Below, piece after piece: positions 13,152 to 25,840 of a DNA stretch of 64,000 bases (the first letter of the stretch is position 1; each line of letters starts with the position of its first letter). Source of the DNA: Octopus sinensis (taxonomy: Eukaryota). A program made the position numbers and the translations under genes. The DNA is taken from the NCBI RefSeq assembly GCF_006345805.1, contig NC_043021.1, positions 28,644,001 through 28,708,000 of the forward strand. Direction: 5' to 3'. The notes beneath the pieces were generated by a model, which was given only the letters and a program-made list of their open reading frames with translations, was not told the DNA's origin and did no database searches.

Positions 13152-13154
<3 letters not shown>

Positions 13155-15392
13155 ATCAATATAGGGTGGTGAAAAAAGTTTGTAGAATTCTTTTTGCCAC
13201 CAGCGGCCTAGTGGGAAAAAATTAAATAGTCGTAGACCATTTTTAAGTTCAACATCAACAATCAAGGAACGGCCATAATAGGCCATTCACCCACTAGAAA
13301 TAACAGCCAAAGCTTCAACCGCAAATAAAGATCAATTCCGTAAACAGGAGAAAATTTAAAAAAACATTTACCCTGTAATTTCTTGTACGATGCACCGTTT
13401 CGTCTGCTGTTTAATGGTAAACTAACCTGATTAAATTAAATCAAGCCAATCTTCCATAGGCCCTCAGATTCTTCAGCAAGAAATAGCCAAGTCGGAACAG
13501 ATATTTTCACGAGGCATTTCCGACCCTGCCAAGGCGATATCTGACCTAAAATTTTCAAATCGTCGCACTCGCGCCAAATTTATCGGCAGCAAATAAATAT
13601 AAGCCGTCGATTCCATTACGGAATTAACCAGAAAATTCATAATTAATCAATATAGGGTGGTGAAAAAAATTTTGTAGAATTCTTTTTGCCACCAGCAGCC
13701 TAGTGGGAAAAAATTAAATAGTCGTAGACCATTTTTAAGTTCAACATCAACAATCAAGGAACGGCCATAATAGGCCATTCACCCACTAGAAATAACAGCC
13801 AAAGCTTCAACCGCAAATAAAGATCAATTCCGTAAACAGGAGAAAATTTAAAAAAACATTTACCCTGTAATTTCTTGTACGATGCACCGTTTCGTCTGCT
13901 GTTTAATGGTAAACTAACCTGATTAAATTAAATCAAGCCAATCTTCCATAGGCCCTCAGATTCTTCAGCAAGAAATAGCCAAGTCGGAACAGATATTTTC
14001 ACGAGGCATTTCCGACCCTGCCAAGGCGATATCTGACCTAAAATTTTCAAATCGTCGCACTCGCGCCAAATTTATCGGCAGCAAATAAATATAAGCCGTC
14101 GATTCCATTACGGAATTAACCAGAAAATTCATAATTAATCAATATAGGGTGGTGAAAAAAATTTTGTAGAATTCTTTTTGCCACCAGCGGCCTAGTGGGA
14201 AAAAATTAAATAGTCGTAGACCATTTTTAAGTTCAACATCAACAATCAAGGAACGGCCATAATAGGCCATTCACCCACTAGAAATAACAGCCAAAGCTTC
14301 AACCGCAAATAAAGATCAATTCCGTAAACAGGAGAAAATTTAAAAAAACATTTACCCTGTAATTTCTTGTACGATGCACCGTTTCGTCTGCTGTTTAATG
14401 GTAAACTAACCTGATTAAATTAAATCAAGCCAATCTTCCATAGGCCCTCAGATTCTTCAGCAAGAAATAGCCAAGTCGGAACAGATATTTTCACGAGGCA
14501 TTTCCGACCCTGCCAAGGCGATATCTGACCTAAAATTTTCAAATCGTCGCACTCGCGCCAAATTTATCGGCAGCAAATAAATATAAGCCGTCGATTCCAT
14601 TACGGAATTAACCAGAAAATTCATAATTAATCAATATAGGGTGGTGAAAAAAATTTTGTAGAATTCTTTTTGCCACCAGCAGCCTAGTGGGAAAAAATTA
14701 AATAGTCGTAGACCATCTTTAAGTTCAACATCAACAATCAAGGAACGGCCATAATAGGCCATTCACCCACTAGAAATAACAGCCAAAGCTTCAACCGCAA
14801 ATAAAGATCAATTCCGTAAACAGGAGAAAATTTAAAAAAACATTTACCCTGTAATTTCTTGTACGATGCACCGTTTCGTCTGCTGTTAATGGTAAACTAC
14901 CTGATTAAATTAAATCAAGCCAATCTTCCATAGGCCCTCAGATTCTTCAGCAAGAAATAGCCAAGTCGGAACAGATATTTTCACGAGGCATTTCCGACCC
15001 TGCCAAGGCGATATCTGACCTAAAATTTTCAAATCGTCGCACTCGCGCCAAATTTATCGGCAGCAAATAAATATAAGCCGTCGATTCCATTACGGAATTA
15101 ACCAGAAAATTCATAATAATCAATATGGTGGTGAAAAAAAGTTTGTAGAATCTTTTTGCCACCAGCGGCCTAGTGGCAAAAAATTAAATAGTCGTAGACC
15201 ATTTTTAAGTTCAACATCAACAATCAAGGACGGCCATAATAGGCCATTCACCCACTAGAAATAACAGCCAAAGTTCAACCGCAAAAAAGATCAATTCCGT
15301 AAACAGGAGAAAATTTAAAAAAAACATTTACCCTGTTAATTTCGTACGATGAGCACCGTTTCGTCTGCTGTTTAATGGTAAACTAACCTGAT
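13152..15392 (-). repeat. Left arm of HHR-containing tandem array (about 4.5 units of 489-492 bp)
   Basis: Marker AATCAATAT recurs at 13154, 13645, 14137, 14629, 15118; reverse complement of the right-arm unit; 4 complete HHRs and one cut inside stem II. Confidence 0.95.
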
Positions 15393-24300: not shown

Positions 24301-25836
24301 GTTGAAGCTTTGGCTGTTATTTCTAGTGGGTGAATGGCCTATTATGGCCGTTCCTTGATTGTTGATGTTGAACTTAAAAATGGTCTACGACTATTTATTT
24401 TTTCCCACTAGGCTGCTGGTGGCAAAAAGAATTCTACAAAATTTTTTTCACCACCCTATATTGATTAATTATGAATTTTCTGGTTAATTCCGTAATGGAA
24501 TCGACGGCTTATATTTATTTGCTGCCGATAAATTTGGCGCGAGTGCGACGATTTGAAAATTTTAGGTCAGATATCGCCTTGGCAGGGTCGGAAATGCCTC
24601 GTGAAAATATCTGTTCCGACTTGGCTATTTCTTGCTGAAGAATCTGAGGGCCTATGGAAGATTGGCTTGATTTAATTTAATCAGGTTAGTTTACCATTAA
24701 ACAGCAGACGAAACGGTGCATCGTACAAGAAATTACAGGGTAAATGTTTTTTAAATTTTCTCCTGTTTACGGAATTGATCTTTATTTGCGGTTGAAGCTT
24801 TGGCTGTTATTTCTAGTGGGTGAATGGCCTATTATGGCCGTTCCTTGATTGTTGATGTTGAACTTAAAAATGGTCTACGACTATTTAATTTTTTCCCACT
24901 AGGCCGCTGGTGGCAAAAAGAATTCTACAAAATTTTTTTCACCACCCTATATTGATTAATTATGAATTTTCTGGTTAATTTCGTAATGGAATCGACGGCT
25001 TATATTTATTTGCTGCCGATAAATTTGGCGCGAGTGCGACGATTTGAAAATTTTAGGTCAGATATCGCCTTGGCAGGGTCGGAAATGCCTCGTGAAAATA
25101 TCTGTTCCGACTTGGCTATTTCTTGCTGAAGAATCTGAGGGCCTATGGAAGATTGGCTTGATTTAATTTAATCAGGTTAGTTTACCATTAAACAGCAGAC
25201 GAAACGGTGCATCGTACAAGAAATTACAGGGTAAATGTTTTTTTAAATTTTCTCCTGTTTACGGAATTGATCTTTATTTGCGGTTGAAGCTTTGGCTGTT
25301 ATTTCTAGTGGGTGAATGGCCTATTATGGCCGTTCCTTGATTGTTGATGTTGAACTTAAAAATGGTCTACGACTATTTAATTTTTTCCCACTAGGCCGCT
25401 GGTGGCAAAAAGAATTCTACAAAATTTTTTTCACCACCCTATATTGATTAATTATGAATTTTCTGGTTAATTCCGTAATGGAATCGACGGCTTATATTTA
25501 TTTGCTGCCGATAAATTTGGCGCGAGTGCGACGATTTGAAAATTTTAGGTCAGATATCGCCTTGGCAGGGTCGGAAATGCCTCGTGAAAATATCTGTTCC
25601 GACTTGGCTATTTCTTGCTGAAGAATCTGAGGGCCTATGGAAGATTGGCTTGATTTAATTTAATCAGGTTAGTTTACCATTAAACAGCAGACGAAACGGT
25701 GCATCGTACAAGAAATTACAGGGTAAATGTTTTTTTAAATTTTCTCCTGTTTACGGAATTGATCTTTATTTGCGGTTGAAGCTTTGGCTGTTATTTCTAG
25801 TAGGTGAATGGCCTATTATGGCCGTTCCTTGATTGT

Positions 25837-25840
<4 letters not shown>
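15389..25840 (+). repeat. Right arm of HHR-containing tandem array (about 21.2 units of 487-498 bp, mode 491-492); candidate non-LTR retrozyme
   Basis: CTGAAGA core at 15787, 16279, 16770, 17257, 17748, 18237, 18728, 19220, 19711, 20205, 20697, 21195, 21686, 22176, 22668, 23161, 23652, 24144, 24635, 25126, 25618. Confidence 0.95.
15779..15885 (+). ncRNA. Type I hammerhead ribozyme of the array unit (first + copy; one per unit)
   Basis: ATTTCTTG-CTGAAGA-A-TCTG..(68 nt total)..CAGA-C-GAAA-CGGTGCATCG-TA-CAAGAAAT; 8-bp stem I; predicted cleavage 3' of A15877. Confidence 0.85.

What the first reader, a model, noticed from the sequence alone, without database searches (positions are those of the whole stretch)
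13152..25840. 12.7-kb array in which every 492-bp unit is a hammerhead ribozyme cassette: candidate cephalopod non-LTR retrozyme or circular-RNA system
Seen: 25 complete, near-identical copies of ATTTCTTG-CTGAAGA-[68 nt]-GAAA-CGGTGCATCG-TA-CAAGAAAT, one per unit, with no conserved ORF. Established: type I HHR tandem repeats (newt satellite 2, schistosome Sm-alpha, cave-cricket pDo500, animal non-LTR retrozymes) are transcribed as multimers, self-cleave to monomers, and in several cases circularise. They are thought to be mobilised by PLE enzymes. Inference: a read-through transcript would be cut into about 491-492-nt monomers starting CAAGAAAUUACAGGG and ending CGGUGCAUCGUA. The unit is long compared with the retrozymes I know. 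I cannot tell whether this family has already been described.
Basis: partly seen in the sequence, partly recalled or inferred. Interest (0 to 1): 0.92.

Follow-up and report, generated by a model that had tools for sequence, protein, structure and literature searches.

The report
Hammerhead-ribozyme tandem repeat (retrozyme-type array)
A 12.7-kb stretch made of about 26 near-identical 492-bp repeats, each carrying a plausible self-cutting hammerhead RNA motif, looks like a new family of the known animal "non-LTR retrozyme" repeats, but it is untested at the bench.

Summary
TRF finds a 492-bp period from 13148 to 25840, and the quoted motif occurs exactly 25 times (0 expected). Block 1 has 4.6 units with the ribozyme on the minus strand (13148-15392). 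Block 2 has 21.2 units with it on the plus strand (15433-25840). They meet head-to-head at a 16-nt stutter, and both outer ends abut (TA)n.

The motif is a full-length type I hammerhead with every core base present. It departs from the canon in an A10.1·C11.1 mismatch and a 68-nt helix II, so Rfam scores it 18 bits against a threshold of 34. Only about 5 in 100,000 shuffled units contain a motif this good.

The ribozyme-sense RNA is strongly structured. No ORF, tRNA or second ribozyme is present. Penelope-like elements lie next to the array in (TA)n tracts, and one shows the same tandem-plus-inverted layout.

Best reading: a non-LTR retrozyme array, probably integrated by PLE-type machinery. 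Cleavage, circular RNA, mobility and the "cephalopod" label were not testable. No diverged relatives were found, so core conservation is untested. The 492-bp unit is within published ranges. Verdict: new member of a known kind, of moderate interest.

The parts
13148..15392 (-). Block 1: 4.6 units of the 492-bp repeat with the ribozyme-sense strand on the minus strand. It holds four intact HHR motifs (13378-13484, 13870-13976, 14362-14468, 14854-14958) and one 5'-truncated, indel-damaged copy at the inner end. Its 3' end (unit position 235) abuts (TA)n.
15389..15449 (.). Head-to-head (5'-to-5') junction of the two blocks. It consists of (TGATCTTTATTTGAAT) x3.8, a stutter of unit positions 48-63. 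Block 1 breaks inside helix II (unit position 448), block 2 starts at unit position 52, and the two share a TGAT microhomology.
15433..25840 (+). Block 2: 21.2 units with the ribozyme-sense strand on the plus strand and 21 intact HHR motifs. Its 3' end (unit position 132) abuts (AT)n.
15779..15885 (+). Representative type I hammerhead. Helix I is 15779-15786 paired with 15878-15885 (8 bp). The core CUGAAGA is 15787-15793. Helix II is 15794-15861 (68 nt): an A10.1·C11.1 mismatch, 4 bp, an internal loop, then a long distal stem. GAAA is 15862-15865. Helix III is 15866-15875 (C-G, G-C, G·U with a palindromic UGCA loop). U16.1 and A17 are 15876-15877, and the predicted cut lies between 15877 and 15878.
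15878..16369 (+). Representative 492-nt monomer predicted after self-cleavage. The linear MFE is -141.8 kcal/mol (z -4.4). The circular MFE is -138.1 kcal/mol with 62% of bases paired.
12699..13151 (.). Left flanking microsatellite. It is impure TA/TG-rich, with pure (TA)n at 13094-13151 touching the array. It is the presumed insertion target and is shared with the 5' end of PLE B.
25839..25993 (.). Right flanking (AT)n microsatellite, which touches the array end.
8340..12873 (-). Neighbouring Penelope-like element 'PLE B' (context, not part of the repeat). It has RT (YRDD) and GIY-YIG ORFs that are interrupted and 5'-truncated, and an HHR-like motif with a 60-nt helix II in its 3' UTR (8574-8484). 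Its 3' end abuts (AT)n 8272-8339. It represents the enzyme class thought to mobilise retrozymes, and this copy is probably dead.

Best explanation
The array is a family of animal non-LTR retrozyme: a non-coding, non-autonomous retroelement whose 492-bp unit encodes a type I hammerhead ribozyme.

Proposed cycle; every step below is inferred, and only the sequence features are shown.
1. The ribozyme-sense strand is transcribed as a multimer. Pol II is the more likely polymerase, because the sense strand has six T runs of 4 or more per unit, which would stop Pol III.
2. Each hammerhead folds co-transcriptionally, either alone (helix III = A15.1-U16.1 plus 3 bp) or as a double hammerhead with the next unit. 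The segment ACGGUGCAUCGU is self-complementary and can form a 12-bp intermolecular helix III.
3. Cleavage 3' of GUA releases 492-nt monomers running from CAAGAAAU... to ...CAUCGUA.
4. A host tRNA ligase circularises them. The circle refolds into a compact branched form in which a UUCUU/AAGAA hairpin sequesters the core.
5. A Penelope-like RT/GIY-YIG enzyme nicks a (TA)n tract and reverse-transcribes the circular or multimeric RNA into a tandem cDNA.

The two-block layout has 3' ends pointing outward against (TA)n and 5' ends joined head-to-head with microhomology and a stutter. This is read as priming from both nicked target strands, the same layout that bona fide PLEs show in this window.
For: Motif and statistics:
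- All hammerhead core bases are present, and the match to Rfam RF00163 is full length (model positions 1-45).
- The isolated 107-nt motif folds into the three-way junction as its MFE, z -3.4.
- A structural descriptor finds a motif this good in 1 of 20,000 shuffled units (5e-5) under strict criteria and in 5e-4 under relaxed criteria.
- The motif is intact in 25 of 25 full units.

RNA-level asymmetry:
- Sense MFE is -141.8 kcal/mol (z -4.4), against -102.4 (z -3.05) for the antisense.
- The circular sense fold has 62% of bases paired, against 49% for the antisense.
- A ribozyme is found on one strand only.
- The helix III dimer cofolds at -19.5 kcal/mol, against -1.2 for the monomer.

Retrozyme criteria from the literature (tandem type I HHR repeats, no LTR or ORF, GC below 50%, self-paired RNA, coexistence with PLEs):
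- GC is 37.6%.
- No meaningful ORF is present.

PLE context:
- RT+GIY-YIG ORFs lie at 4981-6672, 10026-12873, 57219-57611 and 58806-59942.
- Both array ends, both PLE B ends and the PLE A 3' end touch (TA)n tracts, which cover only 2% of the window.
- Published PLE insertions favour microsatellites and form tandem plus inverted 5'-truncated copies.
- The PLE C family at 54.7-64 kb shows exactly that layout, as does the 349-bp inverted HHR-like pair at 35.8-36.6 kb.
Against: - Position 10.1/11.1 is an A·C mismatch where canonical hammerheads have a highly conserved G-C.
- The Rfam score is 18 bits against a gathering score of 34, with E 0.55 over all families on 1.6 kb.
- No recognisable loop1/loop2 tertiary contacts are present.
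- In the MFE of the circle and of the uncleaved context, helix I is replaced by an alternative hairpin.
- No expression or cleavage data exist.
- The whole unit is as conserved as the core (5 substitution sites in 11.3 kb), so the array offers no evidence of selection on the ribozyme.
- No second locus, solo copy or diverged relative was found in the window or in any searchable collection, so mobility is unproven.
- The unit has no significant similarity to any PLE terminus available here.
- Variants C181T and A145G are interspersed among units of both blocks. That does not fit one rolling-circle copy of a single circle.
Confidence: 0.7

Rival explanations
1. This is ordinary satellite DNA. 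In this reading a 492-bp repeat was amplified and homogenised by unequal crossing-over or replication slippage. Its hammerhead motif is an inactive relic of a retroelement fragment that happened to be amplified, and the inversion is a later rearrangement.
For: - The unit shows uniform, near-total identity, with no excess conservation of the core.
- The A10.1·C11.1 mismatch and the sub-threshold Rfam score both fit an inactive relic.
- Shared variants are interspersed among units, as expected from recombinational homogenisation.
- No other copies exist in the window.
Against: - The motif is complete and intact in all 25 full units.
- The sense RNA is much more structured than the antisense.
- The self-complementary helix III segment is typical of working tandem hammerheads.
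- Both ends abut (TA)n and the blocks join head-to-head, mirroring real PLE insertions in the same window.
- Classical 'satellites' with hammerheads (newt satellite 2, cricket pDo500) turned out to be transcribed and self-cleaving, so the two readings overlap.
Confidence: 0.2
2. The array is a tandemly amplified pseudo-LTR (terminal non-coding region) of an autonomous Penelope-like element. In this reading it is part of a PLE rather than a separate non-autonomous family.
For: - PLE pLTRs carry hammerheads, and retrozymes are phylogenetically close to pLTRs in Xenopus.
- PLE B lies 450 bp away, on the same strand as block 1.
- The HHR-like motif of PLE B also has a very long helix II of 60 nt.
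Against: - The unit has no significant similarity to PLE A, B or C sequences in the window, or to the intact relative L002. The best matches are 35-44 nt with E 0.018-0.83.
- PLE B carries its own, different HHR-like motif.
- A 450-bp microsatellite separates PLE B from the array.
- No ORF lies within or between the units.
Confidence: 0.07
3. The copy number and the inverted junction are partly assembly artefacts, such as a fold-back or chimeric long read, or a collapsed or expanded repeat.
For: - Differences between units are dominated by indels, with 22 indel columns against 5 substitutions.
- The innermost unit next to the junction has 12 gaps and 2 mismatches in 542 nt. This is the pattern of uncorrected long-read error.
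Against: - The same head-to-head layout occurs in the short 349-bp inverted pair at 35.8-36.6 kb and in the PLE C copies.
- That layout is a published hallmark of PLE insertions.
- The junction has a specific microhomology and a 16-nt stutter rather than a clean palindrome centre.
- An artefact would not affect the existence of the repeat or its ribozyme.
Confidence: 0.1
4. This is a Pol III-driven SINE-like element of the Sm-alpha type, or an integrated copy of a viroid-like or delta-like RNA replicon.
For: Sm-alpha combines a type I hammerhead with a SINE. The antisense strand holds an A-box-like string (CGGCCTAGTGG), seen by eye only.
Against: - ARAGORN finds no tRNA-like gene.
- The sense strand has six T runs of 4 or more per unit, including T7, T7 and T6, which would terminate Pol III inside each unit.
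- The A-box-like string is on the wrong strand and is followed by a T5 run.
- No second ribozyme of any Rfam family is found on either strand, and no ORF is present.
Confidence: 0.03

Closest known systems
Animal non-LTR retrozymes (Cervera & de la Peña 2020, PMC7229834; for example coral Acropora 220-240 bp, mussel Mytilus 350-390 bp, axolotl 330-350 bp)
   Same: Each unit of a head-to-tail, non-coding, AT-rich repeat carries a type I hammerhead. The RNA is predicted to be highly self-paired. Helix III is short with a palindromic loop. PLEs are present in the same genome. As in the mussel hammerheads, the canonical loop1/loop2 contacts are missing, and as in axolotl HHR_Amex2 there is a mismatch at the base of helix II.
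   Different: The unit is 492 bp, above the 170-400 nt of that paper but inside the 51-972 bp range of the 2026 survey. Helix II is 68 nt rather than 4 bp plus a loop. Position 10.1/11.1 is A·C. The array is split into two inverted blocks. No RNA data exist.
Cave-cricket pDo500 satellite and newt satellite 2
   Same: These are tandem satellites whose transcripts self-cleave through a type I hammerhead. The pDo500 unit is about 500 bp, and its 10.1/11.1 positions vary. They are thought to act as dimers.
   Different: No sequence similarity was tested or is expected. Those families are genome-wide and conserved across species, with compensatory changes. Here only one locus is known and there is no comparative data.
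Minimal hammerheads of Penelope-like element pLTRs (Cervera & de la Peña 2014, PMC4209133)
   Same: The array is associated with PLEs. The helix III region is palindromic, which implies action as a dimer. Pairs of motifs occur on opposite strands 100-700 bp apart, as seen at 35.97-36.41 kb. The G-C pair at 10.1/11.1 is not always kept in this window's motifs.
   Different: The array's hammerhead has a real helix III (3 bp plus a tetraloop) and an 8-bp helix I, so it is closer to a 'canonical' than to a 'minimal' hammerhead. It also sits in an ORF-less 492-bp tandem, not in the terminal repeat of a 3-4 kb element.
Schistosoma Sm-alpha
   Same: It is a non-autonomous repeat with a type I hammerhead.
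   Different: Sm-alpha is a dispersed, Pol III-type SINE. Here there is no tRNA-like part, and frequent T runs argue against Pol III.

Membership tests
Hammerhead ribozyme, type I (Rfam RF00163) | Conserved core: C3 U4 G5 A6 N7 G8 A9, G12 A13 A14, the A15.1-U16.1 pair, and H17 (not G) at the cleavage site | tested here: met
   The sequence reads CUGAAGA ... GAAA ... U-A, with C1.1-G2.1 closing helix I. The alignment to model positions 1-45 is full length, and the motif is identical in 25 copies.
Hammerhead ribozyme, type I (Rfam RF00163) | Three helices around the core, with helix I open (type I topology) | tested here: met
   Helix I is 8 bp, helix II is 4 bp plus an extension, and helix III is 3 bp plus a UGCA loop. 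The MFE of the 107-nt motif is this junction, and it passes the descriptor scan.
Hammerhead ribozyme, type I (Rfam RF00163) | G10.1-C11.1 pair at the base of helix II (highly conserved, not absolute) | tested here: not met
   The pair is A10.1·C11.1 and is flagged as non-standard in the cmscan alignment. Natural exceptions exist: a U·U in axolotl HHR_Amex2 and changes at these positions in pDo500.
Hammerhead ribozyme, type I (Rfam RF00163) | Score at or above Rfam's gathering threshold | tested here: not met
   The score is 18 bits against 34, with no hit at gathering. Part of the loss presumably comes from the 58-nt insertion in helix II and the mismatch; this was not measured.
Hammerhead ribozyme, type I (Rfam RF00163) | More than chance | tested here: met
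   Of 20,000 shuffled units, a fraction of 5e-5 (strict) or 5e-4 (relaxed) contain such a motif. Shuffles of the 51-kb non-array window give 0.017 hits each.
Hammerhead ribozyme, type I (Rfam RF00163) | Site-specific self-cleavage; loop1/loop2 tertiary contacts | not testable with these tools
   This needs in vitro transcription. No canonical loop nucleotides are recognisable, and an internal loop sits 4 bp up helix II where loop 2 normally lies.
Hammerhead ribozyme, type I (Rfam RF00163) | Covariation or preferential conservation of helices and core among relatives | tested here: inconclusive
   The units are more than 98% identical, with one variant event in the HHR against about 4.5 expected, which is not significant. 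No diverged relatives were found.
Animal non-LTR retrozyme | A type I HHR in every unit of a head-to-tail repeat of a few hundred bp, in multiple copies | tested here: met
   There are 25 intact motifs at a 487-498 bp spacing in two blocks. The unit length lies within 51-972 bp.
Animal non-LTR retrozyme | Non-coding, no LTRs, and GC below 50% | tested here: met
   The longest ORF is 55 aa and has no homologue. Hits to the 43-aa ORF were spurious. No terminal repeats other than the unit itself are present. GC is 37.6%. PBS and PPT were not searched for specifically.
Animal non-LTR retrozyme | Stable, highly self-paired monomer or circular RNA | tested here: met
   The linear fold is -141.8 kcal/mol with z -4.4. 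The circular fold is -138.1 kcal/mol with 62% of bases paired, against -98.6 and 49% for the antisense.
Animal non-LTR retrozyme | Coexistence with autonomous Penelope-like elements | tested here: met
   At least three PLE families with RT plus a C-terminal GIY-YIG lie in the window. There are thousands of homologues, including the intact L002. The copies in the window look damaged.
Animal non-LTR retrozyme | Expressed as linear and circular RNA of unit length | not testable with these tools
Animal non-LTR retrozyme | Mobility: several genomic loci, solo or dimer copies, target-site features | tested here: inconclusive
   No copy lies outside the array in the 64-kb window and none in the public collections searched. 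Both ends lie in (TA)n, so no TSD can be read. The rest of the genome was not available.
PLE pseudo-LTR | Sequence similarity to the termini of a PLE that carries an RT/EN ORF | tested here: not met
   nhmmer and blastn of the unit against the rest of the window and against L002 give only 10-44 nt matches, with E of 0.012 or more.
Sm-alpha-like SINE (Pol III) | A tRNA-derived head with A and B boxes on the ribozyme strand, and a unit transcribable by Pol III | tested here: not met
   ARAGORN finds no tRNA. The sense unit has six T runs of 4 or more.
Viroid-like or delta-like RNA replicon | Ribozymes in both polarities, or a delta-antigen-like ORF | tested here: not met
   Only the sense hammerhead appears at E up to 10 on both strands, and no ORF is present.

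The most novel reading that the evidence does not exclude
The locus may preserve the footprint of one PLE-type integration of a retrozyme. The footprint has four parts:
- Two cDNA blocks primed from the two nicked strands of a (TA)n tract.
- Each block starts at a different AU-rich point of a circular or multimeric template (unit positions 132 and 235).
- One block is extended over more than 21 unit lengths.
- The two 5' ends are joined head-to-head through a TGAT microhomology after a 16-nt RT stutter.

If so, this would be direct structural evidence for how retrozymes are integrated. Their integration by PLE enzymes has so far been inferred from co-occurrence and from pLTR similarity. It would also define a hammerhead subclass with a 60-70-nt helix II and a non-G-C 10.1/11.1 pair, shared by retrozymes and PLEs of this genome.
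Probability: 0.3. Interest if true: 0.55.

Novelty: new member of a known kind. Interest (0 to 1): 0.38.

Why it matters
If the hammerhead is active, the animal makes an abundant 492-nt circular RNA from a repeat that standard Rfam annotation misses. That would extend retrozymes to another lineage. No paper in the searchable library describes hammerhead repeats in cephalopods, although the organism itself could not be verified here.

The locus is also a compact natural experiment. The array, three PLE families and a short inverted hammerhead-like pair all sit in (TA)n tracts and share a tandem-plus-inverted layout. That can be used to test the proposed PLE-mediated integration of retrozymes.

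The A10.1·C11.1 mismatch and the long helix II give a simple biochemical question about how far the core is tolerant. None of this changes the known picture of retrozymes. It adds a family and a well-preserved insertion.

Tried and rejected
1. Relatives by DNA pattern. Two hammerhead patterns and one hairpin pattern from the unit were scanned against metagenome, viral and bacterial/archaeal genome contigs. All returned 0 hits. These collections probably hold little or no DNA of this animal.
2. Relatives through spurious ORFs of the unit.
   - An exact look-up of the 55-aa ORF found nothing.
   - A word-based homology search found nothing.
   - A full HMMER scan with the 43-aa ORF gave two hits. 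One is a bacterial repeat protein. The other is a translated 55-bp satellite (L001) with no hammerhead. Both were rejected as chance.
3. Copies of the unit elsewhere in the window. There are none; the best matches are 32-35 nt from an unrelated four-copy repeat.
4. Homology between the first 45 nt of the unit and the 3' end of PLE A. The match is 77% over 44 nt with E 0.83. It was not reproduced in the intact relative L002 and was rejected as unproven.
5. Rfam support for the other hammerhead-like motifs (PLE B 3' UTR and the 36-kb pair). There is none at E up to 10. They rest on my descriptor only. The MIR2606 'hit' at 36.1-36.3 kb simply reflects the 349-bp inverted repeat.
6. tRNA or SINE origin. 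No tRNA is present. An A-box-like string seen by eye is on the antisense strand and is followed by a T5 run.
7. Excess conservation of the hammerhead within the array. It is not significant.
8. Long contigs of PLE relatives (P0086, P0042). They are not on record.
9. Organism identity.

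
Full report
OBSERVATION

Tandem Repeats Finder reports a 492-bp period over 13148-15392 (4.6 copies, 98% matches) and 15433-25840 (21.2 copies, 99%). The two consensus units are reverse complements of each other.

Four copies are on the minus strand (13378-14958) and 21 on the plus strand (15779-25716).

Predicted cleavage sites are 487-498 bp apart, mostly 491-492. 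A 26th, 5'-truncated copy lies at the inner end of the minus-strand block.

THE RIBOZYME MOTIF

Rfam at gathering thresholds finds nothing in the window. With permissive thresholds the only relevant hit is Hammerhead_1 (RF00163). It matches once per unit over the full model (positions 1-45) at 18 bits, against a gathering score of 34, with E 0.55 for 1.6 kb against all 4227 families.

The alignment shows what is present and what costs score:
- CUGAAGA, GAAA, the A15.1-U16.1 pair, A17 and the C1.1-G2.1 closing pair are all present.
- There is a 58-nt insertion inside helix II.
- 10.1/11.1 is an A·C mismatch.

On its own the 107-nt motif folds into the three-way junction as its minimum-energy structure (-29.5 kcal/mol, z -3.4). 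Helix I is 8 bp. Helix II has 4 bp, then an internal loop and a long distal stem. Helix III is 3 bp.

I wrote a structural descriptor covering the core boxes plus helices I, II and III, and applied it to shuffles:
- 1 of 20,000 dinucleotide shuffles of the unit (5e-5) pass at the stringency the real motif meets, and 5e-4 pass at a relaxed setting.
- Shuffles of the 51 kb outside the array give 0.017 hits each.

The motif is therefore not a chance find.

Helix III plus its flanks (ACGGUGCAUCGU, with a palindromic UGCA loop) is self-complementary. Two copies cofold at -19.5 kcal/mol, against -1.2 for the hairpin. This is the arrangement described for metazoan type I hammerheads that act as dimers in tandem transcripts.

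Against activity:
- G10.1-C11.1 is called highly conserved.
- Exceptions are documented, though: U·U in an axolotl retrozyme and changes at these positions in cricket pDo500.
- No canonical loop1/loop2 contacts are recognisable. The same is true of the mussel retrozyme hammerheads, which still cleave at about 0.1 per minute.

THE UNIT AS AN RNA

- The predicted monomer (for example 15878-16369) folds at -141.8 kcal/mol (z -4.4). The antisense folds at -102.4 (z -3.05).
- As a circle the sense strand has 62% of bases paired (-138.1 kcal/mol), against 49% (-98.6) for the antisense.
- In the circular and uncleaved-context MFEs, a UUCUU/AAGAA hairpin replaces helix I. Competing inactive folds of this kind are usual in circular hammerhead RNAs (own knowledge).
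- No other Rfam family, on either strand, reaches E 10, apart from a meaningless lncRNA match.
- ARAGORN finds no tRNA.
- The longest ORF is 55 aa.
- GC is 37.6%. The sense strand has six T runs of 4 or more per unit and no AATAAA. The antisense has two AATAAA.

I infer Pol II rather than Pol III transcription of multimers. This is a weak inference.

VARIATION WITHIN THE ARRAY

- Among 23 complete units there are only 5 substitution sites, against 22 indel columns. Most indels lie in homopolymers.
- The unit next to the junction has 12 gaps and 2 mismatches. Much of the 'divergence' therefore looks like long-read error.
- One variant event falls in the 107-nt hammerhead, where about 4.5 would be expected. 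This is not significant.
- Two real-looking variants, C181T (10 units, at a CpG) and A145G (4 units), are interspersed and occur in both blocks.

The array therefore says nothing about selection on the ribozyme. It also does not look like a copy of one single circle.

ARCHITECTURE AND SURROUNDINGS

In unit coordinates:
- Block 2 runs from position 52 to a 3' end at position 132. It is preceded by three extra copies of the 16-mer at unit positions 48-63.
- Block 1 runs from position 448, inside helix II, to a 3' end at position 235.
- The two 5' ends meet at a TGAT microhomology.
- Both 3' ends touch pure (TA)n tracts (13094-13151 and 25839-25869).

Pure (TA)n of 16 bp or more makes up 2% of the window.

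The window is full of Penelope-like elements:
- PLE A is an RT (YRDD) plus C-terminal GIY-YIG ORF at 4981-6672(-).
- PLE B comprises ORFs at 10026-11270(-) and 11440-12873(-).
- Further fragments lie at 57219-57611(-) and 58806-59942(+).
- Pfam support is weak (RVT_1 E 1.5e-4; GIY-YIG E 0.0034).
- The copies are mutually related, at 40% identity over the RT and 32% over the EN.
- PLE A has thousands of homologues.

One homologue, L002, is an intact 713-aa element with direct terminal repeats. Its upstream repeat carries the same minimal hammerhead as the 3' end of PLE A (CTGATGA-10 nt-GAAACTCAGAGT), with one compensatory change in helix I.

PLE B lies 450 bp from block 1 on the same strand. 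Its 3' end abuts (AT)n at 8272-8339. Its 3' UTR holds a hammerhead-like motif with a 60-nt helix II (8574-8484).

A third hammerhead-like family forms a 349-bp inverted pair at 35800-36148 and 36235-36583, with a (TA)n tract on its right side. Neither of these two extra motifs is supported by Rfam.

The PLE C family (54.7-64 kb) consists of two direct copies plus an inverted copy upstream.

Published work describes exactly these traits for PLE insertions: a microsatellite bias including (TA)n, partial tandems, an inverted 5'-truncated copy next to the upstream end, and short extra tails. The array shares all of them.

INTERPRETATION

The array meets every testable criterion of the animal non-LTR retrozymes defined by Cervera and de la Peña. 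It also sits in the genomic setting expected if PLE enzymes integrate such elements.

I propose the cycle given under best explanation. Every step after 'the DNA encodes a hammerhead-shaped RNA' is inference. The head-to-head layout with both 3' ends on (TA)n is most simply explained by priming from both strands of one nicked target. A later inversion or an assembly error cannot be excluded.

The main rival is an inert satellite that carries a relic motif. It differs from my reading mostly in whether the RNA is made and cut, which only experiments can settle.

COMPARISON WITH WHAT IS KNOWN, AND NOVELTY

- Unit length is unremarkable. Retrozyme consensus lengths span 51-972 bp, arrays reach 300 units, and pDo500 is about 500 bp.
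- The unit has no detectable similarity to any PLE terminus I could examine.
- No relative was found in the metagenome, viral or prokaryote-genome collections.
- No paper in the library links hammerheads or retrozymes with cephalopods, beyond a PLE survey that mentions them separately.
- I could not confirm that the window is from a cephalopod.

I rate this a new member of a known kind, with two modest peculiarities (the long helix II and the A·C pair at 10.1/11.1) and an unusually legible insertion structure. Interest is 0.38.

Noticed in passing
window 3896-7720 (-); motif 3940-3968 (-); second copy 54511-54539 (+); locus L002 476-520: PLE A is a roughly 3.8-kb Penelope-like element bounded by (TA)n at both ends, with a 563-aa RT+GIY-YIG ORF. 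Its last 60 nt hold a minimal hammerhead, CTGATGA-ACGGCAACGA-GAAAC-TCAGAG-TA. The same motif lies in the upstream terminal repeat of an intact relative (L002, 59% protein identity), with a U-A to C-G compensatory change in helix I.
   Followed up: partly
window 8484-8574 (-): The 3' UTR of PLE B carries a hammerhead-like motif: helix I of 6 bp, CUGAUGA, a 60-nt helix II with G10.1·U11.1, GAAA, a 1-bp helix III, and UA. It lies about 150 nt from the element's 3' end. It passes my descriptor but not Rfam, and its fold is not unusually stable (z +0.3).
   Followed up: partly
window 35800-36148 and 36235-36583: This is a 349-bp inverted repeat, 99% complementary with an 86-nt spacer. Each arm holds the hammerhead-like motif CTGTG-CTGACGA-31 nt-GAAA-CCGTTCGG-TA-CACAG (A10.1-U11.1), pointing outward. 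A (TA)n tract touches the right arm. It is the same head-to-head layout as the big array, in miniature. Rfam's MIR2606 'hit' here (72 bits against a threshold of 140) just reflects the long hairpin.
   Followed up: partly
window 54665-64000, and 1-3900: These regions hold complex nested PLE repeats. There are two direct copies 4638 bp apart (57659-59371 and 62297-64000, 98.6% identical). An inverted copy lies upstream (54665-56368 against 63364-61661, 97%; 56359-57149 against 61702-60911, 98%). Related inverted pieces occur at 1-2433. This is the typical tandem-plus-inverted PLE insertion pattern.
   Followed up: partly
window 10026-11270 (-): The endonuclease ORF of PLE B contains a long Asn-rich low-complexity insert (about 200 aa of N, S and K codons) between the RT-proximal part and the zinc-finger/GIY-YIG part. 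It is separated from the RT ORF by a 170-nt gap, so this copy is probably inactive.
   Followed up: no
window 46271-49772 and 46721-51839 (-): A LINE-type element has RVT_1 and zf-RVT ORFs on the minus strand. Next to it is a 1.75-kb tandem duplication (46271-48005 against 48018-49772, 93% identical).
   Followed up: no
window 51998-52190: A 25-bp minisatellite (TGTTTGTGGATAGATTTCGGAGCTC, 7.7 copies, 97% matches) lies next to the 5' end of the LINE.
   Followed up: no
window 14861-15392 and the whole array: Differences between units are mostly single-base indels in homopolymers, and they are densest beside the inverted junction. This suggests residual long-read consensus error, so true unit identity is probably above 99.5%.
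   Followed up: partly
array units; unit positions 145 and 181: Two substitution variants are interspersed irregularly among units and occur in both inverted blocks. A145G is found in 4 units. C181T is found in 10 units and lies at a CpG. No explanation was tested; possibilities are a heterogeneous template, gene conversion or recurrent deamination.
   Followed up: no
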